NCBI GenBank assembly: GCA_053919585.1
Contig: CM132823.1
Strand: one strand, 5' to 3'
DNA length: 64,000 nucleotides
From: Euprymna scolopes
Lineage: Eukaryota
Shown: positions 19,510 to 51,500 of the stretch, in pieces
How the letters are laid out: the number at the start of each line of letters is the position of its first letter
How positions within the stretch are numbered: the first letter of the stretch is position 1
Notes under the pieces: generated by a model
The model's database searches: none
What the model was told of the DNA's origin: nothing
The model's input: only the letters and a program-made list of their open reading frames with translations
Translations under genes and position numbers: made by a program

Positions 19510-20170
19510 GATCCTTTTTCCTGTTCATTCACAATTTAAGTGAGAAAGGGATAAATAGTCGTGTCTCAAATGATGCAGAGAATTGGATAGGACAAATTAT
19601 TTAAGATTCTCAAAGTTGTAATTTAAACAAAAATGTTAGCTAAAACTAATAAACACCCTCCAATCAAAATTGACTGGCAAAGTATAATTTTTTATGTAGT
19701 GTTTATGCTAATTTCTACATTTTTAATCATTCAATATATGGTGTTTTTATTTAATTATCCAATGTTTATGCAAATTGCAGAGTGAAAGATGAACTTTTTA
19801 TCTGTATTAGGCATAATTATGAAAAACAAATGAATCCTTTCCTGTTCATTCACAATTTAAAACTTGCCAAACTAATGTCCACCTAGTGAGAAGGGGAGAT
19901 AAATAATCGTGTCAAATGATGCAGAGTATTGGACTATTTTTAAGGTTTCCAAAATTGTAATTTCAAACTTATGTTTGCTAAAACTACTAATCTACATTCT
20001 CCAATCAAAATTGACCGGCTTAGTATAATTTTTTTATGTAGTGTTTATGCTAATTTCATAATACAATTTTTTAGAATCATTCAATATGGCGTTTTTAGTT
20101 AATTACATTCTTATGCAAATTGCAGAGTAAAAGATGAACTTTTATCTGTCCATATTAGGCATAGTCATGA
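19510..20170 (+). repeat. Local tandem duplication of about 330 bp
   Basis: ATCCTTT..CCTGTTCATTCACAATTTAA...CAGAGT.AAAGATGAACTTTT...ATTAGGCATA occurs at about 19510 and 19833. Only one copy is present in the right arm (about 51135-51460). Confidence 0.8.
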
Positions 20171-21099
20171 ACATTTTGATCAAACTCGTTAAGTAGCAAA
20201 ATATAAAACAATTCTTGCAGTAGTAACATAACTGCTTTCAGTATTTGAGACTGATTTAATGTCCGTCAATAGGTATTTCAATTTAAAAAAAAACATACAT
20301 TTTAATATTGACTGTTGAATGATAAATTATCGCCATTGCTTGATAATATTTAAGTTTTCGAATGGTTCACAATAAACTAATGTTAGTTTTGGGAATTCAT
20401 AAAACGATCTTTATCTTAACGCAGCAACAATATACAACTTAACATGAATTTTTTAAAGTTAGGTCGATGGGGTTTCAATAGCAGAGTCCATTGGCCCCAG
20501 CTTTACCAGATATATTTGGCAGCAATTGTTAGGGCTGTGACGAGAATATTCTTTAAAAGCATATTCTAAAAATAAAGTTTTGTGCCGAAAATATGCTGGA
20601 ACAAATATTAGAGCATGGGTAAAATTTTTTCTCCCAGACAGATAAATTAAACTTGTTCAAACACTTAGGTGTGAATTTACAAGAGGGTATAAAATTTGGT
20701 CTGTAGTAAAGGAGTGATATAGGCAGATCACTCAACATGCCCATCGCATTGTGCTTGTAGTATTAGTTCCCAGTATGTAATTACAAAATAGACTATGCAG
20801 AAATTAGCACTCCTGATGGAAGATGGCAAGATTTGAATAGGAATTTAAAGATTACCAGTTCACTGGCGATTGCTTAACCTGCAAATGCAATATTCAGATA
20901 AGTTATAGCGCATAAGATTTGAAATAGTTGTATCAGATTAGTATTGTTATACAAATTACTGTAATTTGTATTTCGAATTGCGTAACGAAAAAACTATCCG
21001 TATAAAAATTTCGTTGAATGTTGAGATTTAATCAGCCATCTACTCGGCACGTTAATTAAAAGTTAATGCACTGAAAATATCTTAATACTTATAAATATT

Positions 21100-22350
21100 T
21101 CAGTTGTACAGATCAAAAGTTGCAAGTCTTTACTGGAGCAGCATTTAAAAACCAACATATGGCGAAAAAGACCTACATGGTAACATCAGGCACAGTTCCT
21201 ACTGCAACTGCTCGTGATTGTCAAGAAGTCAGTACAAGTAATTTGTTCAATGCTGACTTCTGCAAAGCGTCGATTGCCATGGATATCCCGTTCAATAATA
21301 TGAGCAATGACGTGTTCAGAGAATTTCTACACAAGTCCACAAGTAGAAATATTCCGGATCAGACTACCATTAGGAAATATTAGGTTATATTGGGGAAGGT
21401 TATATCAATATTCCATAAGAATCTTTCACTTAGTGATACAAGCACCAAGTGAACGTTTCAACAATTTGCCCCACTATTAGTAAAGTGAACAAAGCAAAAG
21501 TTAAGTCACCCAGAAAAAAGAAACGTGAGAATGAAACTGGGTCTCCATTGACGAAACTAATGGATGTAGAGCAGCGTTTTATTGCTTTGAGTTTGGCATT
21601 CTAAGGGTAGTGGGGAATAACGTTATTTGGGAAACCTTGCATGTCTGCCAAAGCTAAATCACTATAATTTAGGCATTTTTCAAAGATTCATTGAAGTTTT
21701 TGTGGCTGCAGCAAGCGCTTTACAGCATTGTGCTCCTCAAAAGATGCGGTTTCACTTGACAAAAGCTGTGAATGCTCTCCAAGTATTGTACCCTAAAATG
21801 ATACAAGTGCTTAGCCCAGCATACCAAAAAGTGAATAAGCTCATTTCCACAGAAGAGTAGGTTTTAAAGGCACCCAATAGAATCGACAAGTTCAGAGAAC
21901 TAGTTCCAGGGATGCCCCTTCTACCGAGGTGGGGGTACATGGCTAGAGGCAGTGCACTATTATGCTCAATATTTACATGAAATTACTGCCGTGATGTCCC
22001 TAGATTCAGAGGAACAAGGTATATCAGAGTGCCAAAAACTGTTGAATGCTGCCCTGCTTATCAGATTTATTGCAAAGTTTTTAAATGTTAAAATATTACG
22101 AAGAGACGAAATGGCCGAGTCTTAACATCTATTGGATTACTTGCCGAGGTCGAAATGACACTAGAGATGGACTTCCAATTTCGTAGAAAGCTTAGTGCTT
22201 TCAGAGAACAGTTAAGTGCCGAAGAAATAGCCAGTTTCATGTATGCTCCGGTAGTCTCCTGCAACAAGTTTTTTTTACAATATAAGACTTTTAACAGACA
22301 ACCGAAGAAGCTTTAATATTGATAATTTAATTGCAAAATGCAATGAATGA
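21100..22350 (+). pseudogene. hAT transposase pseudogene (CGGBP1/DUF659-like)
   Basis: FNADFCKASIAMDIPFNNMSNDVFREFLHKSTSRNIPDQTTIRKY; WVSIDET..DVEQRFIA; ALQVLYPKMI; LKAPNRIDKFRELVPGMPL..RWGTWLEAVHYY. Stops and frameshifts. Confidence 0.8.
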
Positions 22351-22488
22351 AGTGTTTAATTGTTCAAAGTATTTATAGTTTAAAAAAAATAGCGTTTTTC
22401 TAAATCTTGACCTATTGCATTAACCGAGTTGAACAAAATTGATAGAATTTGTAAACTACTGAATACCGTTGTAACACTTACCACAAGC

Positions 22489-25400
22489 AATAGAAAGCGT
22501 ATTGCATAAAATAGAAAGCGTATTGCATAAAATAGAAAGCGTATTGCATAAAATAGAAAGCGTATTGCATAAAATAGAAAGCGTATTGCATAAAATAGAA
22601 AGCGTATTGCATAAAATAGAAAGCGTATTGCATAAAATAGAAAGCGTATTGCATAAAATAGAAAGCGTATTGCATAAAATAGAAAGCGTATTGCATAAAA
22701 TAGAAAGCGTATTGCATAAAATAGAAAGCGTATTGCATAAAATAGAAAGCGTATTGCATAAAATAGAAAGCGTATTGCATAAAATAGAAAGCGTATTGCA
22801 TAAAATAGAAAGCGTATTGCATAAAATAGAAAGCGTATTGCATAAAATAGAAAGCGTATTGCATAAAATAGAAAGCGTATTGCATAAAATAGAAAGCGTA
22901 TTGCATAAAATAGAAAGCGTATTGCATAAAATAGAAAGCGTATTGCATAAAATAGAAAGCGTATTGCATAAAATAGAAAGCGTATTGCATAAAATAGAAA
23001 GCGTATTGCATAAAATAGAAAGCGTATTGCATAAAATAGAAAGCGTATTGCATAAAATAGAAAGCGTATTGCATAAAATAGAAAGCGTATTGCATAAAAT
23101 AGAAAGCGTATTGCATAAAATAGAAAGCGTATTGCATAAAATAGAAAGCGTATTGCATAAAATAGAAAGCGTATTGCATAAAATAGAAAGCGTATTGCAT
23201 AAAATAGAAAGCGTATTGCATAAAATAGAAAGCGTATTGCATAAAATAGAAAGCGTATTGCATAAAATAGAAAGCGTATTGCATAAAATAGAAAGCGTAT
23301 TGCATAAAATAGAAAGCGTATTGCATAAAATAGAAAGCGTATTGCATAAAATAGAAAGCGTATTGCATAAAATAGAAAGCGTATTGCATAAAATAGAAAG
23401 CGTATTGCATAAAATAGAAAGCGTATTGCATAAAATAGAAAGCGTATTGCATAAAATAGAAAGCGTATTGCATAAAATAGAAAGCGTATTGCATAAAATA
23501 GAAAGCGTATTGCATAAAATAGAAAGCGTATTGCATAAAATAGAAAGCGTATTGCATAAAATAGAAAGCGTATTGCATAAAATAGAAAGCGTATTGCATA
23601 AAATAGAAAGCGTATTGCATAAAATAGAAAGCGTATTGCATAAAATAGAAAGCGTATTGCATAAAATAGAAAGCGTATTGCATAAAATAGAAAGCGTATT
23701 GCATAAAATAGAAAGCGTATTGCATAAAATAGAAAGCGTATTGCATAAAATAGAAAGCGTATTGCATAAAATAGAAAGCGTATTGCATAAAATAGAAAGC
23801 GTATTGCATAAAATAGAAAGCGTATTGCATAAAATAGAAAGCGTATTGCATAAAATAGAAAGCGTATTGCATAAAATAGAAAGCGTATTGCATAAAATAG
23901 AAAGCGTATTGCATAAAATAGAAAGCGTATTGCATAAAATAGAAAGCGTATTGCATAAAATAGAAAGCGTATTGCATAAAATAGAAAGCGTATTGCATAA
24001 AATAGAAAGCGTATTGCATAAAATAGAAAGCGTATTGCATAAAATAGAAAGCGTATTGCATAAAATAGAAAGCGTATTGCATAAAATAGAAAGCGTATTG
24101 CATAAAATAGAAAGCGTATTGCATAAAATAGAAAGCGTATTGCATAAAATAGAAAGCGTATTGCATAAAATAGAAAGCGTATTGCATAAAATAGAAAGCG
24201 TATTGCATAAAATAGAAAGCGTATTGCATAAAATAGAAAGCGTATTGCATAAAATAGAAAGCGTATTGCATAAAATAGAAAGCGTATTGCATAAAATAGA
24301 AAGCGTATTGCATAAAATAGAAAGCGTATTGCATAAAATAGAAAGCGTATTGCATAAAATAGAAAGCGTATTGCATAAAATAGAAAGCGTATTGCATAAA
24401 ATAGAAAGCGTATTGCATAAAATAGAAAGCGTATTGCATAAAATAGAAAGCGTATTGCATAAAATAGAAAGCGTATTGCATAAAATAGAAAGCGTATTGC
24501 ATAAAATAGAAAGCGTATTGCATAAAATAGAAAGCGTATTGCATAAAATAGAAAGCGTATTGCATAAAATAGAAAGCGTATTGCATAAAATAGAAAGCGT
24601 ATTGCATAAAATAGAAAGCGTATTGCATAAAATAGAAAGCGTATTGCATAAAATAGAAAGCGTATTGCATAAAATAGAAAGCGTATTGCATAAAATAGAA
24701 AGCGTATTGCATAAAATAGAAAGCGTATTGCATAAAATAGAAAGCGTATTGCATAAAATAGAAAGCGTATTGCATAAAATAGAAAGCGTATTGCATAAAA
24801 TAGAAAGCGTATTGCATAAAATAGAAAGCGTATTGCATAAAATAGAAAGCGTATTGCATAAAATAGAAAGCGTATTGCATAAAATAGAAAGCGTATTGCA
24901 TAAAATAGAAAGCGTATTGCATAAAATAGAAAGCGTATTGCATAAAATAGAAAGCGTATTGCATAAAATAGAAAGCGTATTGCATAAAATAGAAAGCGTA
25001 TTGCATAAAATAGAAAGCGTATTGCATAAAATAGAAAGCGTATTGCATAAAATAGAAAGCGTATTGCATAAAATAGAAAGCGTATTGCATAAAATAGAAA
25101 GCGTATTGCATAAAATAGAAAGCGTATTGCATAAAATAGAAAGCGTATTGCATAAAATAGAAAGCGTATTGCATAAAATAGAAAGCGTATTGCATAAAAT
25201 AGAAAGCGTATTGCATAAAATAGAAAGCGTATTGCATAAAATAGAAAGCGTATTGCATAAAATAGAAAGCGTATTGCATAAAATAGAAAGCGTATTGCAT
25301 AAAATAGAAAGCGTATTGCATAAAATAGAAAGCGTATTGCATAAAATAGAAAGCGTATTGCATAAAATAGAAAGCGTATTGCATAAAATAGAAAGCGTAT

Positions 25401-25785
25401 TGCATAAAATAGAAAGCGTATTGCATAAAATAGAAAGCGTATTGCATAAAATAGAAAGCGTATTGCATAAAATAGAAAGCGTATTGCATAAAATAGAAAG
25501 CGTATTGCATAAAATAGAAAGCGTATTGCATAAAATAGAAAGCGTATTGCATAAAATAGAAAGCGTATTGCATAAAATAGAAAGCGTATTGCATAAAATA
25601 GAAAGCGTATTGCATAAAATAGAAAGCGTATTGCATAAAATAGAAAGCGTATTGCATAAAATAGAAAGCGTATTGCATAAAATAGAAAGCGTATTGCATA
25701 AAATAGAAAGCGTATTGCATAAAATAGAAAGCGTATTGCATAAAATAGAAAGCGTATTGCATAAAATAGAAAGCGTATTGCATAA
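22489..25785. repeat. Perfect 21-bp minisatellite (AATAGAAAGCGTATTGCATAA) x157
   Basis: 3297 bp / 21 = 157 units; no variant units seen. Confidence 0.98.
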
Positions 25786-27861
25786 AAGCAATAGAAAGCG
25801 TATTGCATAAAAGCAATAGAAAGCGTATTGCATAAAAGCAATAGAAAGCGTATTGCATAAAAGCAATAGAAAGCGTATTGCATAAAAGCAATAGAAAGCG
25901 TATTGCATAAAAGCAATAGAAAGCGTATTGCATAAAAGCAATAGAAAGCGTATTGCATAAAAGCAATAGAAAGCGTATTGCATAAAAGCAATAGAAAGCG
26001 TATTGCATAAAAGCAATAGAAAGCGTATTGCATAAAAGCAATAGAAAGCGTATTGCATAAAAGCAATAGAAAGCGTATTGCATAAAAGCAATAGAAAGCG
26101 TATTGCATAAAAGCAATAGAAAGCGTATTGCATAAAAGCAATAGAAAGCGTATTGCATAAAAGCAATAGAAAGCGTATTGCATAAAAGCAATAGAAAGCG
26201 TATTGCATAAAAGCAATAGAAAGCGTATTGCATAAAAGCAATAGAAAGCGTATTGCATAAAAGCAATAGAAAGCGTATTGCATAAAAGCAATAGAAAGCG
26301 TATTGCATAAAAGCAATAGAAAGCGTATTGCATAAAAGCAATAGAAAGCGTATTGCATAAAAGCAATAGAAAGCGTATTGCATAAAAGCAATAGAAAGCG
26401 TATTGCATAAAAGCAATAGAAAGCGTATTGCATAAAAGCAATAGAAAGCGTATTGCATAAAAGCAATAGAAAGCGTATTGCATAAAAGCAATAGAAAGCG
26501 TATTGCATAAAAGCAATAGAAAGCGTATTGCATAAAAGCAATAGAAAGCGTATTGCATAAAAGCAATAGAAAGCGTATTGCATAAAAGCAATAGAAAGCG
26601 TATTGCATAAAAGCAATAGAAAGCGTATTGCATAAAAGCAATAGAAAGCGTATTGCATAAAAGCAATAGAAAGCGTATTGCATAAAAGCAATAGAAAGCG
26701 TATTGCATAAAAGCAATAGAAAGCGTATTGCATAAAAGCAATAGAAAGCGTATTGCATAAAAGCAATAGAAAGCGTATTGCATAAAAGCAATAGAAAGCG
26801 TATTGCATAAAAGCAATAGAAAGCGTATTGCATAAAAGCAATAGAAAGCGTATTGCATAAAAGCAATAGAAAGCGTATTGCATAAAAGCAATAGAAAGCG
26901 TATTGCATAAAAGCAATAGAAAGCGTATTGCATAAAAGCAATAGAAAGCGTATTGCATAAAAGCAATAGAAAGCGTATTGCATAAAAGCAATAGAAAGCG
27001 TATTGCATAAAAGCAATAGAAAGCGTATTGCATAAAAGCAATAGAAAGCGTATTGCATAAAAGCAATAGAAAGCGTATTGCATAAAAGCAATAGAAAGCG
27101 TATTGCATAAAAGCAATAGAAAGCGTATTGCATAAAAGCAATAGAAAGCGTATTGCATAAAAGCAATAGAAAGCGTATTGCATAAAAGCAATAGAAAGCG
27201 TATTGCATAAAAGCAATAGAAAGCGTATTGCATAAAAGCAATAGAAAGCGTATTGCATAAAAGCAATAGAAAGCGTATTGCATAAAAGCAATAGAAAGCG
27301 TATTGCATAAAAGCAATAGAAAGCGTATTGCATAAAAGCAATAGAAAGCGTATTGCATAAAAGCAATAGAAAGCGTATTGCATAAAAGCAATAGAAAGCG
27401 TATTGCATAAAAGCAATAGAAAGCGTATTGCATAAAAGCAATAGAAAGCGTATTGCATAAAAGCAATAGAAAGCGTATTGCATAAAAGCAATAGAAAGCG
27501 TATTGCATAAAAGCAATAGAAAGCGTATTGCATAAAAGCAATAGAAAGCGTATTGCATAAAAGCAATAGAAAGCGTATTACATAAAAGCAATAGAAAGCG
27601 TATTACATAAAAGCAATAGAAAGCGTATTACATAAAAGCAATAGAAAGCGTATTACATAAAAGCAATAGAAAGCGTATTACATAAAAGCAATAGAAAGCG
27701 TATTACATAAAAGCAATAGAAAGCGTATTACATAAAATAAAAGCAATAGAAAACGTATTACATAAAAAAGCAATAGAAAACGTATTACATAAAATAAAAG
27801 CAATAGAAAACGTATTACATAAAATAAAAGCAATAGAAAACGTATTACATAAAATAAAAGC
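25786..27861. repeat. 25-bp minisatellite AAGCAATAGAAAGCGTATTGCATAA x71, then about 7 ATTAC-variant units and 4 ancestral-type 27-30-bp units
   Basis: G-variant 25786-27560. A-variant 27561-27740. AAAACGTATTAC units 27741-27857. Confidence 0.97.
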
Positions 27862-29679
27862 CAAAGAATAGTGTTGCTAACACAAAACTAAGTTACCAAG
27901 CATACAAATAACGTAAAACTAAGTTACAAGTATTCGCCAGAAGTACTTGGAAAATATGTGATTAAAAAATATTTGTTCCAAAGAATGCTTTTTACAAAAC
28001 ATTCCCATGAAAAGCATATTAAGCATACGGCCAAAGAATATTTTCAGCATACCACGACAATATAAAGCATATCTGTAAAAGAATATTGTCACAGCCCTAG
28101 TTATTATGAATCCATTCTTTTTAGTTCTGGAACAAAACGCATGGTTATGTTGATAGCACTTGCTATTCGCATCGGCATTCTTTAATAGGTTGGATTCACT
28201 TCATGGGACTCCACATTTCACTATGGAAAGTGAAGTTTCTTCCCTTCTTGGGTATTGTTGAACATTCAAGGGATGGCTTTCTCACTACCATTTACAGGAA
28301 GCAGACTTACCGACTTGTATGTGAACAAGTCTTTGGTAAAAAAATAAACTAGAAACGGTCAGTTTAATTTATACGTTGCTACATCGAGCCCTCATGATTT
28401 ATTCACCTAGTAGACTACACTCCGGACTATATAAAAAGCAGGGAACTATTCATTAATAACGGTTATTCAGAAGACCTTGTGAGTATTACAAAAGGTTGCA
28501 GACTTCAAATCTGCAGAAATATTTGGGCCATTAAAATGTCCCGTTTATTTAAAAACGTGGATAGGGGATAATATAAAATTCACTAGTTTGGTAGAAATAT
28601 TACTTCTATTTTCTTGCAAGTGGTATATACTACGAAACCTGCCTTTTCTTTATGCAAGGATAGTCCCCCCCTACATCCACAACAGTAATATTGTCTATCA
28701 ATTTAAATGCCAGTGTGATGCCAGTTTAAGTGGGACAGACTCTGCATTTTCAGACTCGTATAAGCCAGCACATTTCATCCAAAATTAGAAAGGGAATGGT
28801 AGGATCGGCGAATCTTCCAACTTTGGACTGCTATTGGCCAGCATTTTGCTTAAAATCCATGTGCCAATAAGCATAAAACCAGAGACTTGAGGTATTACAT
28901 AAAACAGATGTCAAAAAACATTTCGGAATCTTTCGCCATTCGAAAATCTACGTCGGCAGGAGGAGTCGATAAAAGCGTTATATCTTTGGGGAACTGATCC
29001 CCTTCATTCTGTTTTTTGTCCCTTCCACGCAGCGTCATTTTAATCGTCTTATACACGTCTATCTAATTAAATTATTTCAAGTCTTTCGGTACTTTATAAT
29101 TCTCACAGTAGTCTTATTTTCGCCAATGATACTTTCTATGTAATCGATTTCCTGACGAGATAACTGAAAGACCTATTGACAGATTTCCGCCTATCTTGCT
29201 TAAACATACCCATACAATGCATGCAGATATGTATAGACACGGTTTTGGAGTAAAGTTTAAAATATTTATGTTGGAAGATTTACTTGTCTTCGGTTACATT
29301 TGTTTTAATCATTTGCGTTTTGTTGGATCTTGTTAAAATCTAGTTTTTATCCTTTAAATTTAATTCACCTTTTATTTTTAGTTCATGTCAAAACTAAGTT
29401 CCATTAACTAAGTAGTTTTCATTAAAGTTAAATTATCGTTTGTGTTTGTGAAGGAGTGTCTTATGGGAGAAGAGAGCATTTCTTTCATTTATTTTCAGTC
29501 ACGTAAATTGTAGAGCGTTACAAATTCTCACGGATTTAAGTATTTGAAAGGAACAAGCGAAATTATAGCTTACGAATGAAGCTGTATTGTATCGACATAA
29601 AGGATCGCTTTAATTTATATTGACAAAGTTAAAGGTCATGAAATTAGTGTTCATGAAATTCGCTTTGAATTAAAAAGTC

Positions 29680-32045
29680 AATTACTTTGCTATGTTTTGT
29701 TGGATTAAAGTTAGCGCTCCTAAATAAACGTATCCAAATGAATTTCTCTTTAAGAAAACGTCCAAGCCGAAACGGGATCTTGTATTACATACCGCTACGA
29801 GAACAGGACGCCATTTCAGTTAACAGAGCTCGTTTTTTGGTAGCCTTGGCTGGCTGCTCTCAAGTTTACGATGGAATCAATTATAAATCTAATTTCATTT
29901 CGCAATTAGATTATAGAACTTTAGATGAGAATTGATTCGTATTTGAACTCTTCAGAAACACGGCAGTGGATTTCGGTAAAATTCACTTGTAAAAGTTAGT
30001 CAGAGGTCGAGTTCAATCCTCAGTACGGACGACTGAAAAAAATTTATTACTTAAAAATTCTATCCAATCATGGGTGATCGGACAGAGCATGGTAGCCATG
30101 AATTAAATAACTGGTTCCGTTTGAAATTCTATGTAGATTCGTGTTTGAGAAAATACTCCTGAAGGCCAGACTGCATAGACCGAAATTGTGTAGGGAGAGG
30201 GTAAGGGTGGTGAATACATAATCAGAACTAGTTTATGTGGAGTAAGGGTTTCCTTCAGTTTTACATATAACTTAAACCATTTTCTTTCTAAGCGGAAAAT
30301 GTAAACGCGATTTGTATCATTGATAAAGTGTGATATTGTGAATTGTTATTAATCTAAGAAAAAATACGTGCAAACAAAAACAGGATTTGTGTTTCCTACA
30401 TAATACTAAGGGAACGTAACGTCATTTCAATTAACAGGCCTCGTTTTTGCTGGCCTCGGCTGCTCTCAAGTTTACGATGGAATCAATTATGAATCTGAGA
30501 AAGAAACTTGAGAACTTACCATTTAAATTCGAAAACAATCGGCTTTGGTGTTTAGTGCATATAAATCCTGGGGTTTTATGGTATTGTTTAATCGGAACTA
30601 AAATGATCCTATTTTTCTAACACATGGCACTATTTAACATAAAAGGATACCCTGGGATTCATATTTCTTGAAGACTAATCCACTTTAAAATTGTAATTTC
30701 ATTTCGCAATTAGATTATAGAACTTTAGATGAGAATTGATTATTCGTATTTGAATTCTTCAGAAACATGGCATAGGGGATTTCGGTAAAATTCACTTGTA
30801 AAAGTTAGTCAGGTTGAGAGTTCAATCCTCAGTACGGACGACTAAAAAACAATTGCTTATTGCTTAAAAATTCTATCCAATCATGGGTGATCGGACAAAG
30901 CATGGTAGCTCCATGAATTAAATAACTGGTTCCGTTTGAAATTCTATGTAGATTCGTGTTTGAGAAAATACTCCTGAAGAAGGTCAGACTGCATAGAACG
31001 AAATTGTGTAGGGGGAAGGGTAGGGGTGGTGAATACATGATCAGAACTAAATTATCTGAATCTAGAGTAAGGTTTCCCTTCAGTTTTTACATTTTTTTTG
31101 GCGGCCGTGTATACATTTTTTCACGATAGTTTTTCACTGACCGCTTGATTACCGTTATGCAAATCCCATTTAAGAAAACGGTTTTGGTTTAAATGTAAAA
31201 GCAGTTTATATCATTTTGATAAAATGCGATATTGGCAACACAATACGAAATACGGCTGGGAAATTAAACGTGACTTCGGTTTTTCTCATGGAATATTTTT
31301 ATATCCGAAAATATAAGTTACCGTAAATATTGTGTAAAGCGGTCAAACTTATTTCTAGAAGTCAAAGGCCCAACTGAAAGGGACAAAGATAATTATAAAT
31401 AGGTTCTACGCGATACTTATTTTAGTCCCTTATAGTTTGGTATTGTGTTTAAAAAGAAAATATAAAAAAATATTACTTACCATACAATATTTAAGTCTTC
31501 ATTGAACATCAAAATGCAAACGAGTCACAAATGGGTCGATACGAAATAAATTGTTTCAGTAATTCCCAATTGTACTTCCATTAAAATTGATTGCCGCCAT
31601 TTGTAACATTTAAATTGTTAACTAAGTATCCATTTTAATTAGAATGTGGACACAAGCGTTACTCCTTTAAGTTAAATATAGTTCTTATAAAAATAGTTAA
31701 TTTTAGGTAAAGCCTAGTTTTTAGAAGTAAAGAAATACTTACCTTGTTAGTTTTTTTTTACAAAAAAAGATAAAATCTGTAACGTTTCCATGCGAGGTGT
31801 GCATCAATACGCTGGTTTTACTTAGAATCGAGGAGTGGCTCATACGGTTATTTTAAAGGACGTTCAGCTTTATAAATTTTAAAACGTAGGATGCGATCTT
31901 TTCGTGACAGTTTAAATCATGCGTTCTTTCGTCGTATCAATTTGAATTGCGGTTTTCGTTAATTATATAAGCATCTAAAAGTGAAAATCGCACTAGATAA
32001 ACCAATCAGGACGTATGTTTGAACCAACCAATGAGGAGCGCCGTA
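29680..32045 (-). pseudogene. Unidentified spliced gene remnant (promoter plus several exons), internally tandem-duplicated
   Basis: Minus-strand donors AAG|GTAAGT (about 31742), ATG|GTAAGT (about 31480, 30520) and acceptor TTCTCAG (about 30495). Conserved frame SNTNLHRISNGTSYLIHGATMLCPITHDWIEFLSNKQL. 29680-30330 is duplicated at 30350-31230. Other copies at 43750-44480 (-), 45600-48290 (+) and 37345-37750 (+). Confidence 0.45.
32001..32041 (-). promoter_or_regulatory. Tandem CCAAT boxes (NF-Y-type promoter candidate)
   Basis: ACCAATCAG...ACCAATGAG about 26 bp apart, upstream of the first donor. Both boxes are conserved at 37352-37390; one box is intact at 45607-45642. Confidence 0.35.
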
Positions 32046-32420: not shown

Positions 32421-33830
32421 CACTGCGTGTCAAATTATTAACGAGATAACATTTTTACTAGTTTCAGAAACGTACCGGTAGTTTCGTATCAAAAGCTTTG
32501 GAAACGTTAGCAATGCTGAGCTGCGCGTAGTGTGAAATTTTCGTACTGTTCCCCGCAATGTAAACAACTTACCATCGTAATTGCTGAATCCGCGATATTT
32601 GAGGTGTGTCAAGGCAATTTGTTTCGTCAGTAAAATGGGTCGTAAAGGTGGTTTGAGTAGTTCTGAGAAGAGTACTATTACAGATTAGCTAGCAAAAGGG
32701 AAAACTACCCTTCAAATATCGAAAATGATAAGAAGATACCATCAAACTGTGAAGAACCTTGTCAAGGACCCTACAAAAGTATGTAAGAGAGCTGATAAAG
32801 GTAAATCTGGAGTTGTTTCACGCCGTTCTCTACTCCAAATTAAACGTGAACTTGTTAAGAACCCTTGGCAGAAGTCGATAAGTACACATACCAGCAGGAT
32901 TAAAAAATGTCTCAAAAAGTACTCGATGTCGCCGTCTGAAAGAAGTGACAAAGTCTGTTTAGCCTGTGACAAAGCCTCCATTAAAGCAACATCACATACA
33001 AAACCGATTGTAATAGGCAGAGGACAACACGAAAACGGATTTTCCAATTTTTTTTTACGGATGAAGTGCGTGTCACTCTTGATGGCCCAGATGGCTGGTG
33101 TAAAGGATGGGTCCTAGATGGACGATATAGCCATCAGCGTTTAAGGTGCCAACAAGGTGGTGGTGGGATAATGATTTATGCTGGGATTATCGGGGGGGGT
33201 ACATTAGTTGGCCCATGGAGAGTCCCAGAAGGCGTAAAAATAACATCAAATGCTTACATAGCTTTTTTGAAGGAGCACTTTGAACCATGGCTGAAGAAAC
33301 AAAGGTTGGTGTTCAGAAGAACCATTATTTTTATGCAGGATAATGCTCCCTCGCATGCAGCAAACAAAAGCAAAGAGTATTTGCAACAACTGGGGTTCTC
33401 TGGGCTCCGGAAGATGGAGTGGCCTGCGAATTCAGATTTGAACCCAATTGAGAACCTTTGGAGTATCATGAAGCGACGCCTGTATGCAAGTGGACACCAA
33501 TTTAAGAGCAAAGATGAGTTGTGGGATGCTCTCCAAGAGGTATTGCGAGGAATAACTGTTGACGAAATCACAAATTTGACTAATTCTGTTGACCAAAGTC
33601 TTTTACAAGTCATTCATAAAAAAAGGATCGCATATCCCCTACTAATTATGTCAACGTAGAAATTGCTATGTAGTTATTGTGTTTTAAGCATTTTTCCTAG
33701 TTCATTTAATGTTTGAAATTATTTCAATAAACAAGTTATGGGTATGTTGTGTTTTTTATCAACCTCGTTAATATTCCTATCTTCTACCATAGTTTCGCTA
33801 ATACTACTTTAAATACTTTTATTTTCTGAC
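32421..33830 (+). mobile_element. Tc1/mariner element, TRT (DD37E)-like
   Basis: TA|CACTGCGTGTCAAATTATT left end followed by a transposase remnant. No complete right TIR found. Confidence 0.8.
32635..33659 (+). pseudogene. Tc1-family transposase pseudogene
   Basis: MGRKGGLSSSEK... HTH with an early stop. FTDEVRVTLDGPDGW, QQGGGGIMIYAGI, FMQDNAPSH, WPANSDLNPIENLWS. Frameshifts. Confidence 0.88.
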
Positions 33831-37118: not shown

Positions 37119-37344
37119 NNNNNNNNNNNNNNNNNNNNNNNNNNNNNNNNNNNNNNNNNNNNNNNNNNNNNNNNNNNNNNNNNNNNNNNNNNNNNNNNNN
37201 NNNNNNNNNNNNNNNNNNNNNNNNNNNNNNNNNNNNNNNNNNNNNNNNNNNNNNNNNNNNNNNNNNNNNNNNNNNNNNNNNNNNNNNNNNNNNNNNNNNN
37301 NNNNNNNNNNNNNNNNNNNNNNNNNNNNNNNNNNNNNNNNNNNN
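37119..37344. other. Assembly gap (226 N)
   Basis: Run of N. Confidence 0.99.
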
Positions 37345-45599: not shown

Positions 45600-48500
45600 T
45601 GGCGATCCTCATCGCTTGGTTAAAAAATACGTCCTGATTGGTTTTTATCCCGTGCGATTTTCACTTTTATATGCCTATATAGTTAATGAAAACCACATTT
45701 CAAATTGATACGACGAAAGACCATGATTTAATCGATCACGAATACTGTATCCTTCGTTTTTAAGTTATAAAGCTGGACGTCCTTTAAGATAACCGTATGT
45801 GTCGCTCCTCGATTCTAAGACCAGCGTATTGATGCACACCTCGCATGGAAACGTTTCAGATTTTATCTTTTCTGTAAAAAGTTCTAACAAGAATTGCTGC
45901 TGAACTTTTTATTTTTGTTTAATCTAACCCTTTCTACAAGAATTATATTGCTCTTTGAGACCTCAAAAAATATAACTGATATTCATGAGTTGATAAATTC
46001 TGGTTTGGCCGAGACCTGCAGACTTTACTTTGTGGAAACTTTCTCCACTGAAAGGTAGAGGTTAACAAGGATTTTGCAATGGTTTGTTGCGACCTGTGAC
46101 TAGGTAAAAATTGTAGAACCTTGTCGGTCTGGTAATAAGGGTAACGATTCAATTTCTTTCAACTCCAATCCCAAACTGAAATCACAACCAAAATTCAGTT
46201 CACTCCATTCTTATAATCCAGTTAGCCAATCAAATAAGTTAAACGTAACAACTACCAATATAAAGTCATTACCCACACAAAAGGTTTCTGCTGCAACTCT
46301 TCCTGAGAGTCGCAGGTAAGTGCTTAAAGTTTTCTCAATAACTTAGTTCTTACACTTTACTTTCGCAGGTTTGTATGGTTTTCGATTAAAGAACTTCGCC
46401 TATACTTTTGGCAGCATTTGTATTTCGTAAACTTGGCAAATTTCAGTTTATCGGTGTCTGCCACTTGCGTTCTATTCCAACAAAAATAGAATACACGAGT
46501 TAAATACGAAAACTTTTTTTTTTGGGGGGGGGAATGCTGTTCTCTAATTTCCGTGAATATTGAAATTCGGATACCTAATCTGCTAAAGTACCAATTTGAA
46601 TGTTAATTCAGGCTAAAACGAATCGCATCCCAAAATAATGCATTTGTGTTTTTTTTTTTTTTTTTTTTTTTTTTTTCTGGCTAATTTAAAGTGACCTTCA
46701 GAACGTGAAAAATCCTTCCTGCAAGGAGTCTCCATAGTACTATGCAAATCTAATGGAGAACCTAAAGCTTGTTCCGGGAATGAGGAAACGGTGATTTGAA
46801 AGTCACATTTTTCGTTGAAACTTTAAACCTAAATTTTTTTGAGGTAATTCCGTTAGTCTTTATCGAGCCTACGTTGTTGGGGGGGGGGGGGTTCACCCGC
46901 ACCCCCCTCCCAATTTAAGTTTACCGACTAAAAACTGGTGCAAAGAAGCCTTTCACTTTGCGTTAAATTGCGTGAAAATATTTTCGATACAAACAAGCTG
47001 AGAACACTTCGATAATACAAAAGCATTTTATATCAACGTGGCATTAAACGCAACCTTTTCGTTAAAACCTTCATCTAAAATGTTTTTGGAATTCTCCCGC
47101 AATCTGTTCTTGTACGCAGAAAGTACGTTAGTCATAAAGTTATTAGTTCGCGTTTGATTTATAAGAAACTGCCCCCCCCCCAACTAAAACGATTTTCTAC
47201 CAACACCATGAGTAATTCTACCCGGGATGAACTGGTCGGTAAAAAACAAGCGATAACTGTGCTAGAATTCTCCGGTAAAATTCTAATTAAAATGGATTTT
47301 TATTTAACAATATTTTGTTAAATGTTACAAATGGCGGCAATCAATTTTAATGGAAGTACAATTGGGAATTACTGAAACAATTTATTTCGTATCAACCAAT
47401 TTGTGACGTATTTGCATTTTATTTGATATTTAATGAAGACTTAAATATTGGTTGTGTAAAGTAATAAGCGGTCACTTTATGGAAACACGATATCAAACTA
47501 GAAGCGACTAAAATAAGTATCATGTAGAACCCACTTATAATTTTTATCTTTGTCCTTTTCAGTTGGGTAACTGACTTCCAGAAATAACAAGTTTGACCAC
47601 TTTACACAATATTTACGGTAACTTATATTTTAATATCCGAAAATATTTCGTGAGTGAAACCGAAGTCATGTTAATAGAAATACGGTTGGGAAACTGTTGC
47701 ACATATCACATCCATCAAAATGATAAAAATTGCTTTTACATTTTCCGCCCAGAAAAAATGGTTCAAGTTATATGTAAAAACTGAAGGAAATCCTTACTCC
47801 ACATAGTTCTGATTATGTATTCACCCCCCCACCCACCTTTTCCCTACACACTTTCGGTCTATGCAGTCTGACCTCTTTCAGTATTTTCTCAAACACGAAT
47901 TTACATAGAATTTCAAACGGAACTAGTTATTTAATTCACGGAGCTACCATGCTCTGTCCGATCACCATGATTGGATATTGATTTTTAAGTAATCAATTTT
48001 TTTCAGTCGTCCGTACTGAGGATTGAACTCTCAACCTCTGACTAACTTTTACAAGTGAATTTTACCGAGATCCACTGCCGTGTTTCTGAAGAATTAGATG
48101 AGAATTGATTATTCTTATTTAAAGTTCTATAATCTAATTGCGAAATGGAATAGATTCATAATTGATTCCATCGTAAACTTGAGCAGCCAGCCAAGGCTAC
48201 CAAAACACGAGGCCTGTTAACTGAAATGACGTCACATTCTCGTAGCGGTATGTAGGAAATAAGATCCCGTTTCTGCTTGCACGTTTTTTGTTTTTTACCG
48301 TATTGTACCGTTCACTTACAAGCCAGTAAGTCTGATTCCTGTAAATGGTGAGTCATCCTTTGGATGCTGAACAAGAATACCCCAGAACAAGTGAAGAAAC
48401 TCCACTTTCTCACATTCCATAGTGAAATATTGAGTTCCATGAAGTGAAACTAACCTATTAAAAATTGCCGATGCAAACAGGGTCAACATGCATGTTTAGT

Positions 48501-51500
48501 TCCAGAACCAAAAAGAACGGATTCATAACTAGGGCTATGACAATATTCTTTTACAGATATGCTTTATATTCTCGTGACATGCTGAAAATATTATTCAGCC
48601 ATATGCTTAATATGCTTTTTTTCACGGAAAATGCTCTTTAAAAAACGTTCTTTGGAACAGTATTTTTTGGCTATTGTATAGATTTTTAATCACATTTTCA
48701 GCCTACTTCTGGCGACTACTTCTATGCTTGGTAACTTAGTTTTGTGTTAGTACAATATTCTTTGGCTTTTATTTCATGTAATACGTTTTCTATTGCTTAT
48801 GGTAAGTGTTAAAACGGTATTCAGTAGTTTACAAATTCTATCAAACTTTGTACAACTCGGTTAATGCAATAAAAATAGATTTCGAAAATCTGGTTATTTT
48901 AACGCTATAAATACTTTGAACAATTAAACACTCTGCAATGAATAAAATGTTTTACATTTTGCAATTAAATATCTTTAAATTATCACTTAAAGCTTCTTCG
49001 GTTGTCCGCTAAAACAGTCTTATATTGTGAAAAACTCATTCCACGTTGCAGGAGACTACCAGAGCATACAGGAAGCTGGCTATTGCTTTAGCTCAAACTG
49101 TCAGGTAATCTATGCCATCTACATTCTTTTTTGCAAAACCTTCCTGCTGATTTGTGCATTTGAATGTTTTCAAATACTAAAACCTTTGATCTTTGAAAGC
49201 TGTCCAATTTCTGCGAAATTAGGTCATTCCAAGTGTCACTTCGACCTCGGCAACTAATCCAATAGTCGATAGATTTGGCCCTTTCATCTTTGTAATGTTT
49301 TTTAACGTTAAACTTTGATAAATCTGATAAGCAGGGCTGCATCCTCCAGTTTTTTGGCACTCCGATATACTTTGTGCCTCTGAATCCAGGGACACCACGA
49401 CAGCAGTAATTTCATGTAAATATTTAGTGTAATAGTGTGCTGCATCTAGTCATGTACCCCACCTCGCTACAATGGGGCTTTGTTGAAGGGGCATCCCTGG
49501 AACTAGTTCCTGAACTATCGAGTTCTTTTAAAAATACTCCTGTAGAAATGAGCTTATTCGCTTTTTTGTACGCGTGCCTAACCAATTTTGCAATCCTGTG
49601 CAAACTGGGCTAAACATTTTTGTTATTTTAGGGTACAAAACTTGGAGAGCAGTCATGACTTGTCATATGAAGTCGCATCTGTTACAAGAGCACATTAGGG
49701 TAAAGTACTTGCTACGGCCACAAAACTTTGAAAAATGCCTCAATTATAGTGATTTACCTTTGACAGACATGCAAGGCTTTCCAAATAACACCTTCCTCTA
49801 CTACCCTTAGAATGCCAAACTCTAAGCAATAAAACGCGCTGCTCTAGATCCATAGTTTCGTCAATGGAGACCCAGTTTCATTCTCGCATTTTTTTTTTTT
49901 TTTACTTTTGCTTTGTTCACTTCGCTAATAGTGGGGCAGATTGCTGAAACGTTCACTTGGTGCTTGTATCACTAAGTGAAAGATTCTTATGGAATATTGA
50001 GATAACCTTCCCCAATATAACGTAATATTTCCTAATGGTAGTCTGATCCGGAATATTTCTACTTGTGGACTTGTGTAGAAATTCTCTGAACACGTCATTG
50101 CTCATATTATTGAACGGGATATCCGCGGCAATCGACGCTTTACAGAAGTCGGCATTGAACAATGTGTGCGTCTTTTTCGCCATGTTGGTTTTTAAATGCT
50201 GCACCATTAAAGACTATTGATCTGTAAAAATGAAATTTAATATGCAAGTATGAAGTTATATTAAGTGCATTAACTTTTAATTAACGTGCCGAGTAGATGA
50301 TTGAGATGAAATCAACGTTCAACGGAATTTTGGTACAGCTAGTTTTAACGTTACATAATTTGAAATACAAATTTCAGTAATTTGTATTCACCAATCATAC
50401 GACTATTTCAAATCTTATGCGCTATAACTTATCAGTATTTGCAGGTTAAGCAATCACCAGTTAACGGGTAATCTTCAAATTCCTACACAAATCTTGCCAT
50501 TCGTTCGGCAGAAGTGCTAATTTCGGCATAGTTTTTTCACATTTTGTAAATACGTACTAACACTCCTTGTCTACAAGAACAAAGATGTGTATGTTTATCT
50601 GCCTATATCACTTTTTTTTTCTCTACAGACCAAATTTTAGACCCTTATGTAAATTCACATGTAAAGGTTTGACGAAGTTTAAATTTATCTGGAAAAAAAT
50701 TTAAATCTTGTATTCAAATATTTCGGTTTATTTATTTATTTTTTTTTTTTAGAATATGCTTTTAAAGAATATTCTCGTTACATCCCTAATTACTGCCAAA
50801 TATATCGGCTAAAGCTGGGGCCAATGGACTCTGCCATTGAAACCCCACCGACCTAACTTTAAAAAATTCATGTTTTTAAGTTGTATATTGTCGCTGCATT
50901 AAGATAAAGATTTGTTTCATGAATTCCCAAAACTGACGTTAGTTTATTGTGAACCATTCGGAAACAATTTAAATATCAAGCAATGGCAATGATATCCTTC
51001 AACTGTCAATATCAAAATGTACGTATTTGAGTCTTTAGTAAAAATTAAAATATTGTATCAAATAACTGCTTTCAGTATGTTACTACTGCAAGAATTTTTT
51101 ATATTTTGCTACTTCACGAGTTAGATCAATGTTTTTCATGATTATGCCTAATATGGACAGAAAAGTTCATCTTTTACTCTGCAATTTGCATAAGAATGTA
51201 ATTCTTAACTAAAAACGCCATATATTGAATGATTATAAAAAATTGTATTATGAAATTAGCATAAACACAGAAAAAAATACTTTGCTGGTGAATTTTGATT
51301 AGAGGGTGTAAATTAGTTTAAGCAAACATAAGTTTGTTGGAAATTACAACTTTGGAAACCTTAAAATTAGTCCAATGCTCTGCATCATTTGATACGACTT
51401 TCTTCCCTTCTCACTAGGTGGACATTAGTTTGGCAAGTTTTAAATTGTGAATGAACGGGATAATATTCCTTTAAATTTATTTTCCTAAACCGGTTCGAAG

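What the first reader, a model, noticed from the sequence alone, without database searches (positions are those of the whole stretch)
22489..27857. Strictly polar, layered mutation order in the array (30 > 25A > 25G > 21 bp)
Seen, right to left: 4 progenitor-like units (AAAACGTATTAC, 27-30 bp); about 7 units with A>G (AAAGCG), 6 of which also lose AATAA; 71 units with a further ATTAC>ATTGC; 157 units with a further loss of AAGC. Each change is inherited by everything to its left, blocks never intermix, and block size grows (4, 7, 71, 157). Inference: growth is unidirectional at one edge, by iterative copying of the newest unit (repeated slippage/template realignment, break-induced replication or rolling-circle reinsertion), not random unequal crossing-over. 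Later variants may be more expansion-prone.
Basis: partly seen in the sequence, partly recalled or inferred. Interest (0 to 1): 0.7.

Follow-up and report, generated by a model that had tools for sequence, protein, structure and literature searches.

The report
Polar, layered minisatellite born inside a transposon
A 5.4-kb run of 239 short repeats grew from a single 30-base piece of an old jumping-gene remnant, and its successive mutations are stacked in strict order from one end; this is a very clean example of one-ended repeat growth, which is already known from human minisatellites.

Summary
From left to right the array (22489-27861, + strand) holds 156 x 21 bp, 72 x 25 bp (ATTGC), 6 x 25 bp (ATTAC), 1 x 30 bp with G, 1 x 27 bp and 3 x 30 bp. 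No letter varies inside any block.

An inverted paralog in the same window (unit at 48765-48794, minus strand) and about 22 other copies of the same old dispersed repeat each hold one 30-bp unit in the A/A/AATAA/AAGC state. The right end is therefore ancestral, and four derived changes are nested leftwards. The 3-bp loss of the 27-mer is private and not inherited.

Position-independent models never reproduce this order (0 of about 138,000 simulations; best-case bound 4e-8). A process anchored at the left flank is well supported.

One-ended addition cannot be told apart from one-ended homogenisation with one assembly. "Later variants are more expansion-prone" is not supported. Hairpin potential appears only in the 25G layer, and a pure 25A cycle exists in a run labelled as another organism.

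No raw reads were available, so the block order is not independently verified. Polar minisatellite growth and transposon-derived minisatellites are both known, so this is a tidy new member. An earlier first-stage note on this same stretch (s1-295609) already read it as a satellite born beside its single-copy progenitor, and the scan has noted other transposon-born minisatellites elsewhere in this genome.

The parts
22489..25764 (+). Youngest layer: 156 identical 21-bp units (AATAGAAAGCGTATTGCATAA). It abuts the ancestral left flank, which ends ...CACAAGC.
25765..27564 (+). Second layer: 72 identical 25-bp units with ATTGC and the AAGC tail ('25G'). Each unit can form a 6-bp hairpin TATTGC/GCAATA.
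27565..27714 (+). Third layer: 6 identical 25-bp units with ATTAC ('25A'). They carry AAAGCG and have lost one copy of ATAAA.
   Evidence: an exact 55-bp cycle contig of this type is present in run X5
27715..27744 (+). A single 30-bp unit carrying only the first derived change (AAAACG>AAAGCG).
27745..27771 (+). A single 27-bp unit of ancestral type with a private 3-bp loss in the A-run. The loss is not inherited leftwards.
27772..27861 (+). Oldest layer: 3 identical 30-bp ancestral-type units (AATAGAAAACGTATTACATAAAATAAAAGC).
19828..22488 (+). Left arm of the host dispersed repeat. It is homologous (79-80%) to window 51472-48795 on the minus strand and holds the ancestral motif TATTGCATTAA at 22413-22423.
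27862..28326 (+). Right arm of the host dispersed repeat. Window 27828-28326 is homologous (76%) to 48798-48310 on the minus strand, and homology resumes at 29755-30336.
48765..48794 (-). The single, unexpanded 30-bp unit in the inverted paralog, preceded by AAGC (48795-48798) and followed by CAAAGAATA. This is the progenitor state.
47703..51472 (-). Inverted paralogous copy of the host element, about 80% identical (JC distance 0.23).

Best explanation
This is a young, single-locus, AT-rich minisatellite with no sign of function. It was born in place inside one copy of an old, decayed dispersed repeat.

1. Birth. The founding event was a tandem duplication of a 30-bp stretch bounded on both sides by the 4-bp direct repeat AAGC (inferred).
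2. Copying. New units have since been templated on the unit or units next to the LEFT flank. The likely route is out-of-register copying by replication slippage or by SDSA-type repair started at or near that flank (inferred).
3. Stacking. Each mutation that hit the terminal template was passed to all later units and to none of the earlier ones. The order was A>G, then loss of one ATAAA of a 5-bp tandem pair, then a second A>G, then loss of AAGC between AA microhomologies. This gives the stacked 30 / 30G / 25A / 25G / 21 layers (the order is shown; the cause is inferred).
4. Tempo. Growth sped up as the pure terminal tract lengthened, or came in multi-unit steps or bursts. That left tiny old layers (3+1, 1, 6) and large young ones (72, 156) (inferred).
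5. Age. The bulk of the array is very recent. There are zero substitutions in 5,076 bp of pure repeat, against about 20% divergence between the two local copies of the host element.
For: - Exact layer structure.
- Outgroup polarity. The paralog holds one unit between the same flanks, and 22 other family copies hold one unit with the A/A/AATAA/AAGC state.
- Only this copy expanded.
- Every indel is flanked by microhomology, and the first unit is bounded by AAGC...AAGC.
- Uniform per-unit duplication gave 0/120,000 perfect chains of 5 or more layers, and unequal exchange gave 0/18,000. The best-case bound is 3.6e-8. Edge-templated growth always gives the chain.
- With constant-rate single-unit edge growth, the three oldest layers total 11 units or fewer with P = 2.9e-4. 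Multi-unit copying confined to the pure terminal block gives observed-like sizes up to about 2e-3.
- The upper bound on mean divergence of the pure blocks is 5.9e-4 per site, against a JC distance of 0.23 for the flanks.
- Closed 55-bp period-25 cycle contigs of this repeat occur in independent runs.
- Literature: minisatellite expansion is 'usually polar', and 23% of human minisatellites are TE-derived (PMC3389668).
Against: - There is one haplotype from one assembly and no raw reads. The order and the counts rest on the assembler.
- Identical units cannot show where inside a block copying took place, so 'at the edge' is not separable from 'anywhere in the newest block, provided each new variant started at its left end'.
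- Polar homogenisation explains the same picture, and explains the size progression more simply.
- Even the best toy model reaches observed-like sizes in only about 0.2% of runs.
- In the closest studied analogue (MSY1), length changes are spread in proportion to block size, not at an edge (PMC2599865).
- One search placed the X1 and X2 cycle contigs on the 25A block and not on the three 25G units I supplied. It is therefore unclear whether those samples carry 25G at all.
Confidence: 0.55

Rival explanations
1. Polar homogenisation rather than polar growth. The array was already long. Each new variant arose next to the left flank and spread rightwards by directional gene conversion (boundary switching), overwriting older units. 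Old variants survive only at the far right, where conversion tracts rarely reach. The 21-mer sweep has so far reached 156 units.
For: - It gives the same staircase.
- It explains without any acceleration why the three older sweeps are nearly complete (235/239, 234/235, 228/234) and only the newest is partial.
- Boundary switches by SDSA are documented at the AT-rich, block-structured minisatellite MSY1 (PMC2599865).
- A pure 25A cycle in organism B fits an ancestor that already had a long 25A array.
Against: - Conversion between units of different length (30, 25 and 21 bp) has to change array length as well, so it is not cleanly separate from addition or loss.
- There is no direct evidence for conversion here.
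- It needs the same unexplained left-flank anchoring.
Confidence: 0.2
2. There is no positional bias. Each new variant was intrinsically far more expansion-prone than its parent, and each happened to arise in the leftmost unit of the parental block.
For: - Block sizes rise with derivation.
- ATTAC>ATTGC creates a 6-bp hairpin in each unit, z = -2.3 on both strands, and this coincides with the jump from 6 to 72 units.
Against: - The largest block (21-mer) has lost the hairpin and folds worse than its shuffles (z = +3.1). 25A folds at 0 kcal/mol, yet it forms a closed pure cycle in run X5.
- The leftmost position is needed four times. My arithmetic from the block sizes puts that at about 4e-4 to 0.125, depending on how large each parental block was at the time.
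Confidence: 0.08
3. Centre-out layered expansion, as in centromeric satellites, gave old layers on both sides. One in-register deletion between the leftmost unit and a young unit then removed the left-hand old layers.
For: - Symmetric layering is documented for human alpha-satellite (bioRxiv 10.1101/2021.07.12.452052).
- A homogenised centre with variant edges is documented for Drosophila Rsp (PMC5411766).
- A small 23-bp array in this genome has similar old-looking units at both ends (L039).
- An in-register deletion would keep the flank junction intact.
Against: - It needs an extra event with a precise outcome.
- Centre-out growth by uniform duplication fails the same Polya-urn test, because the old layers should have kept growing.
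- No trace of a left-hand old layer remains.
Confidence: 0.07
4. Assembly artefact. The true locus has interspersed variants or different copy numbers, and consensus building sorted or smoothed them.
For: No raw reads could be examined. The runs are low-coverage contigs only.
Against: - Smoothing does not sort units of three different lengths into nested phylogenetic order.
- The array is 5.4 kb. From general knowledge, that is short enough for single long reads to span; the read type behind this assembly is not known to me.
- Pure closed period-25 cycles of this repeat exist in independent short-read data sets.
- All 239 CpGs and every unit are letter-perfect, which argues for accurate underlying data.
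Confidence: 0.05

Closest known systems
Human hypervariable minisatellites with polarised variability (the MS32/MS205/MS31A type; summarised in PMC3389668 as expansion being 'usually polar', with new units added at one end)
   Same: Tandem units of tens of bp. Variant-repeat maps show that change is concentrated at one end next to a unique flank. The proposed route is out-of-register repair synthesis.
   Different: By my own knowledge, those loci are GC-rich, sit next to meiotic hotspots and mutate by complex inter-allelic conversion that yields interspersed maps. This array is about 70% A+T, has perfectly pure blocks, has units that shorten stepwise (30>25>21), and nothing is known of a hotspot.
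MSY1 (DYF155S1), the human Y-chromosome minisatellite (PMC2599865)
   Same: 25-bp units, 75% A+T, variants arranged in a few pure blocks (e.g. (1)15 (3)42 (4)20), a predicted unit hairpin, an intra-allelic mechanism (SDSA or slippage), and boundary switches.
   Different: In MSY1, units of non-25-bp length are never seen and length changes are spread in proportion to block size. Here unit length changed three times, the old blocks are tiny and apparently frozen, and only one layer has hairpin potential.
TE-derived minisatellites (Ahmed & Liang 2012, PMC3389668; review PMC9659126)
   Same: The unit is a single-copy segment of a dispersed repeat that expanded in one copy only. The first duplication is bounded by short direct repeats (Haber-Louis model).
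   Different: The flanking direct repeat is only 4 bp (AAGC), against 5-20 bp in that survey. The host element is too decayed to classify.
Polar variation of interrupted microsatellites (FMR1 CGG/AGG; PMC4114290, citing Kunst & Warren 1994)
   Same: Variant ('interrupting') units sit at one end, a long pure tract sits at the other end where length change occurs, and instability rises with the length of the pure tract.
   Different: That is a 3-bp unit with strong hairpins in a transcribed 5' UTR. This is a 21-30-bp unit, largely structure-poor, in TE-rich non-coding DNA.
Layered expansion of centromeric satellites (bioRxiv 10.1101/2021.07.12.452052) and homogenised centres with variant edges (PMC5411766)
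   Same: There is an age gradient of layers within a tandem array, with the youngest layer the largest and purest.
   Different: Those gradients are two-sided, with the young layers in the middle. This one is strictly one-sided, with the youngest layer touching a unique flank.

Membership tests
TE-derived minisatellite | The array unit is homologous to a segment that is single-copy in other copies of a dispersed repeat. | tested here: met
   One unit in the window paralog and in 22 other family copies.
TE-derived minisatellite | Both flanks of the array continue colinearly into the same dispersed repeat. | tested here: met
   The left flank ends at 22488, matching 48795. The right flank from 27828 matches 48798.
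TE-derived minisatellite | The host is a recognisable transposable element (class, termini, coding remnants). | tested here: inconclusive
   The family has at least 43 scored matches out of 207 candidates at 69-80% identity. No Pfam domain was found in its ORFs and no terminal repeats were found.
Minisatellite with polar (one-ended) variability | Tandem array of 10-100-bp units at a single locus. | tested here: met
Minisatellite with polar (one-ended) variability | Variant-repeat structure shows derived states concentrated at one end. | tested here: met
   Four nested derived states ordered right to left against an outgroup. Position-independent models are rejected.
Minisatellite with polar (one-ended) variability | New mutations (gains) observed in germline or pedigrees map to that end. 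| not testable with these tools
   This needs single-molecule or pedigree data.
Minisatellite with polar (one-ended) variability | GC-rich unit next to a meiotic recombination hotspot (the classical human type). | tested here: not met
   Units are 68-80% A+T. Hotspot status is unknown.
MSY1-like AT-rich block-structured minisatellite | AT-rich unit of about 25 bp with variants in a few pure blocks. | tested here: met
   Comparison with PMC2599865.
MSY1-like AT-rich block-structured minisatellite | The unit forms a hairpin that constrains unit length. | tested here: not met
   Only 25G folds better than shuffles. The 21, 25A and 30 units fold worse. Unit length changed three times.
Centromere-type layered expansion | Symmetric older layers on both sides of a young core. 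| tested here: not met
   The youngest layer abuts the unique left flank, and old layers lie on the right only.
Functional RNA or coding repeat | A match to a known RNA family, or a plausible coding frame. | tested here: not met
   No Rfam match in the window. The long ORFs through the array only reflect the lack of stop codons in those frames of the repeat.

The most novel reading that the evidence does not exclude
The polarity reflects a strictly flank-anchored, template-switching copy process in this mollusc genome. Repeated re-initiation takes place at one fixed point next to the left flank, possibly in a few saltatory bursts. That process would both add units and introduce templated mutations. 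For example, ATTAC>ATTGC reproduces the ancestral flank motif TATTGCAT 70 bp upstream. If this is general to the many TE-born minisatellites noted in this genome, such arrays would be ordered 'tape recordings' of mutation at one site.
Probability: 0.12. Interest if true: 0.6.

Novelty: new member of a known kind. Interest (0 to 1): 0.35.

Why it matters
The locus preserves every intermediate of a minisatellite's life in one 64-kb window: the single-copy progenitor (in a paralog), the microhomology that seeded the first duplication, and four successive unit variants in order. That makes it a convenient natural test case for how minisatellites start and for whether growth is one-ended. It comes from a non-model animal with a very large, repeat-rich genome.

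It does not reveal a new principle. One-ended minisatellite dynamics and transposon-derived tandem repeats are both established. Its practical value is as a locus where long-read population data could separate polar addition from polar conversion.

Tried and rejected
- Coding or RNA function. Four ORFs run through the array, 1102 aa on the + strand and 1687-1728 aa on the minus strand. They only reflect the lack of stop codons in those frames of the repeat. Rfam gave no match.
- Hairpin-driven increase in expansion propensity. The potential is non-monotonic and the hairpin is weak.
- Independent expansions of the same unit in other family copies. None were found with an exact-core pattern; diverged cores could be missed.
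- Second haplotype or second array in the assembly. None was found.
- Laying reads on the whole array. 
- Fetching 400 kb of neighbouring sequence for a systematic survey of arrays. The baseline therefore rests on a small, non-random set of loci.
- Classifying the host element. There were no domains and no terminal repeats.
- Copy-number estimates in other samples from contig depth. I abandoned these as unreliable because library type and coverage are unknown.
- The big protein searches and the structure tools were not used, because nothing here is protein-coding.
Full report
**1. What is there**

TRF reports one array at 22489-27744 with period 21, 235.5 copies and 99% matches. I read the sequence and split it at the anchor AATAGAAA. 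From left to right the exact run-length structure is:

| Layer | Units | Unit | Coordinates |
|---|---|---|---|
| 21 | 156 | AATAGAAAGCGTATTGCATAA | 22489-25764 |
| 25G | 72 | same plus AAGC | 25765-27564 |
| 25A | 6 | 25 bp with ATTAC instead of ATTGC | 27565-27714 |
| 30G | 1 | 30 bp with AAAGCG and the extra AATAA | 27715-27744 |
| 27 | 1 | 27 bp with AAAACG | 27745-27771 |
| 30 | 3 | AATAGAAAACGTATTACATAAAATAAAAGC | 27772-27861 |

This makes 239 units, six variants and six runs, and not one letter varies inside a run. The one inexact statement is that every change is inherited leftwards: the 3-bp loss of the 27-mer is private.

The pattern is far beyond chance, with 240 matches against 0 in the shuffles. 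In the 5.9-Gb genome the 21-mer is essentially limited to this locus: 248 forward matches at up to 2 mismatches, 239 of them here, against 6 and 5 in the controls.

**2. Context and origin**

The window is TE-rich, 33% G+C non-coding DNA.
- It holds LINE reverse-transcriptase fragments at 55.3-56.1 kb and a Tc1/mariner DDE remnant at 33.1-33.7 kb.
- It has no Rfam match.
- An N-run at 37119-37344 was left untouched.

A self-comparison of the flanks found an inverted paralog at about 47.7-51.5 kb. It is about 80% identical, and both flanks continue colinearly into it. Where the array sits, the paralog has exactly one unit, AATAGAAAACGTATTACATGAAATAAAAGC at 48765-48794 on the minus strand. That unit is preceded by AAGC and followed by CAAAGAATA.

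A genome-wide search with that junction found at least 43 scored matches out of 207 candidates, at 69-80% identity. In all 22 copies that align across the site there is a single unit, with consensus ...AAGC[T/A]ATAGTAAACGTATTACATAAAATAAAAGCCAAAG....

Four things follow:
- The array was born in place from one 30-bp stretch of an old dispersed repeat.
- The founding 30-bp period is bounded by the 4-bp direct repeat AAGC.
- A (AAAACG), A (ATTAC), AATAA-present and AAGC-present are the ancestral states.
- The right end is old and the left end is young.

No other copy in the genome has duplicated the unit (exact cores only). The host could not be classified: no Pfam domain and no terminal repeats. 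An earlier first-stage note on this same stretch (s1-295609) read it as a satellite born beside its single-copy progenitor. My searches confirm that independently.

**3. The steps**

Read from right to left, the inherited changes are:
1. A>G, giving AAAGCG.
2. Loss of one copy of the 5-bp tandem pair ATAAA|ATAAA (30>25).
3. A>G, giving ATTGC.
4. Loss of AAGC (equally AGCA or GCAA) between AA microhomologies (25>21).

The private 27-mer lost 3 bp inside an A-run. All indels are of the slippage type and all shorten the unit.

**4. Is the order informative?**

I simulated growth to 239 units with infinite-sites mutations. The statistic was a perfect nested chain of at least five layers, ignoring private mutations.

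| Model | Perfect chains |
|---|---|
| Uniform per-unit duplication | 0 of 120,000 |
| Unequal exchange, mean segment 1, 3 or 10 units, with or without a same-variant requirement | 0 of 18,000 |
| Growth that always copies the terminal unit | always |

An analytic bound points the same way. Under uniform duplication the share of one unit's descendants follows a Polya urn. Even if each mutation arose when its parental block had only two units, the joint probability of the observed shares (235/239, 234/235, 228/234, 156/228) and of the leftmost position each time is 3.6e-8. The old layers should have kept growing, and they did not.

So a process anchored at the left flank is strongly favoured over random duplication or crossing-over.

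A small, non-random baseline agrees that this layout is not the default in this genome:
- Other minisatellites in loci I held are 63-95% matched, and several show higher-order periods.
- A 13-mer array has 42 units, 5 variants and 31 runs.
- A 9-unit 23-mer array has similar old-looking units at both ends.

**5. What the order does not tell**

- Identical units cannot show where in a block copying happened. The data require only that each new variant began at the left end of its parent.
- Constant-rate, one-unit-at-a-time edge growth does not give the sizes. With four mutations placed at random among the additions, the three oldest layers total 11 units or fewer with P = 2.9e-4, and 0 of 240,000 simulations looked like the data.
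- Copying a variable number of units within the pure terminal block does better, up to about 2e-3. That is still a narrow target, so acceleration or bursts are suggested but not shown.
- A rival within the polar class fits the sizes more simply. Directional homogenisation from the left flank would leave three near-complete old sweeps and one partial young sweep. One assembly cannot separate the two.

**6. Are later variants more expansion-prone?**

I folded about 150 nt of each layer as single-stranded DNA.

| Layer | MFE per ~150 nt (+ / - strand) | z against shuffles |
|---|---|---|
| 25G | -17.7 / -15.9 kcal/mol | about -2.3 on both strands (5 and 4 of 200 shuffles fold as well) |
| 21 | -4.9 / -4.6 kcal/mol | +3.1 |
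| 25A | 0 kcal/mol | +3.4 |
| Ancestral units | -0.9 kcal/mol (117 nt, + strand only) | +1.1 |

- ATTAC>ATTGC creates a perfect 6-bp stem per unit, TATTGC-ATAAAA-GCAATA.
- The later AAGC loss removes the 3' arm of that stem.
- Hairpin potential therefore coincides with the first jump (6 to 72 units) and is absent from the largest layer.
- The stem is also weak: the centroid structure is almost unpaired.

A property that rises monotonically with derivation was not found.

**7. Reads**

Only low-coverage runs kept as Logan contigs were on offer. There were eight runs from four studies, under two coded organism labels.
- As the tool advised, I laid the part with fewer copies, 27490-28100. That used the only call.

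Contigs of exactly 55 bp were laid. In my reading, that is the length of a closed k=31 cycle of a pure period-25 array.
- In X5 (organism B, another study) one contig of depth 26.2 matches the 25A block with 0 differences. No other contig lies on the 25-mers there.
- In X1 (depth 140.8) and X2 (depths 14.3 and 2.5), both organism A, the 55-mers carry 2 differences from the 25A block. That is what a 25G cycle would show.

So pure period-25 arrays of this repeat exist in independent data, and the intermediate 25A form is the one seen in the other taxon. This fits the inferred order, and it speaks against 25A being unable to expand.

Two cautions apply:
- All runs show zero depth on the three 25G units I had included (27490-27564), and the X1 and X2 contigs were placed on 25A. 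If placement is by best score, these contigs are another one-substitution variant and not 25G. The letters are not printed, so I could not resolve this (note 4).
- Library types and coverage are unknown, so I give no copy numbers.

The 21|25G junction and the 21-mer layer were not tested in reads.

**8. Age**

The two pure layers hold 5,076 bp and 228 CpGs without a single substitution. The 95% upper bound on mean divergence since copying is 5.9e-4 per site. The JC distance between the flanks and the window paralog is 0.23. The bulk of the array is thus hundreds of times younger than the local duplication of its host, or it is being continually homogenised.

**9. Comparison with what is known**

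- Ahmed & Liang (PMC3389668) report that 23% of human minisatellites and satellites derive from TEs. [quoted passage not shown] They also cite a model in which short flanking direct repeats seed the first duplication.
- MSY1 (PMC2599865) is a 25-bp, 75% A+T minisatellite with variants in pure blocks, a predicted hairpin, and SDSA-type boundary switches. There, length changes are spread in proportion to block size and unit length never varies.
- FMR1 shows interruptions at one end, length variation in the pure tract at the other end, and a purity threshold (PMC4114290).
- Centromeric 'layered expansion' is two-sided (bioRxiv 10.1101/2021.07.12.452052), as is the homogenised centre of Drosophila Rsp (PMC5411766).

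The present array is therefore a new, unusually clean member of the polar, TE-derived minisatellite kind. It is not a member of the classical GC-rich, hotspot-linked human type, because that feature was tested and not met.

Earlier notes of this scan (unchecked by me) say this is a mollusc genome with many single-locus minisatellites born from TE fragments. That lowers the surprise of the birth and raises the value of asking whether one-sided layering is general there.

**10. A weak extra lead**

The left flank carries an ancestral TATTGCATTAA at 22413-22423. Six of 12 family copies have TATTGCAT at that place. The ATTAC>ATTGC change produced the same 8-mer in the unit. The 8-mer occurs 8 times on the two strands of the 58.6 kb outside the array, so a same-strand hit within 100 bp has roughly a 0.7% chance.

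**11. Verdict**

- The polar inference is well supported against random models.
- The specific mechanism is open, as is the choice between addition and conversion.
- The idea that later variants are more expansion-prone is not supported.
- Independent read-level confirmation of the order is missing.

The locus is ordinary in kind and exceptional in tidiness.

Noticed in passing
window 19828-30336 (+) and 47703-51472 (-): The two copies of the host repeat in this window are inverted, about 26 kb apart and about 80% identical. That is closer than either is to other family members (69-77% to the paralog junction). They may be a local inverted segmental duplication rather than two independent insertions. 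Our copy also has about 1.4 kb (28327-29754) that the paralog lacks.
   Followed up: partly
window 22413-22423: The ancestral flank motif TATTGCATTAA lies about 70 bp left of the array. The derived ATTGC state of the unit reproduces its 8-mer TATTGCAT. A short template switch is possible; the chance estimate is about 0.7%, made post hoc.
   Followed up: partly
window 19539-20171 and 29881-31090: There are further internal tandem duplications near the array: about 345 bp x2 (78-100% identity) and about 810 bp x2 (85-100%). The second includes a tRNA-T-arm-like stretch (GGTCGAGTTCAATCCTC) that suggests a tRNA-derived SINE.
   Followed up: no
window 33066-33659 (+); 55308-56125 (-): A Tc1/mariner-type DDE_3 remnant (E = 2.3e-10) and LINE reverse-transcriptase fragments (E = 3.3e-12). 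The adjacent 375-aa ORF at 56151-57278 has no Pfam match.
   Followed up: no
window 22380-27591: Four very long ORFs (1102-1728 aa) run through the array only because those frames of the repeat lack stop codons. The + frame would read (IESVLHK)n. They are not evidence of a gene.
   Followed up: yes
window 37119-37344: A run of 226 N. It was left as it is, per the operators' note.
   Followed up: no
window 22489-25764: The youngest unit is 21 bp, which is two helical turns. Its A-tracts therefore fall in phase along 3.3 kb, unlike in the 25- and 30-bp layers. Phased A-tracts are known to bend DNA (my own knowledge, not computed here).
   Followed up: no
Read laying on window 27490-28100: Runs X2-X4 and X6 are guessed to be RNA, and X2 holds array-cycle and flank contigs. 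If they really are RNA, the locus is transcribed at some level; the library type is not on record. Separately, no contig was placed on the three 25G units in any run, which is unexplained.
   Followed up: partly
L044:1-590, L043:1-3030, L039:1476-1700: Unrelated minisatellites in this genome were picked up by chance: a 13-mer x45 with two variants fully interspersed; a 31-bp array of about 3 kb with 61/123-bp higher-order periods at 69-77% matches; and a 23-mer x9 with similar units at both ends.
   Followed up: partly
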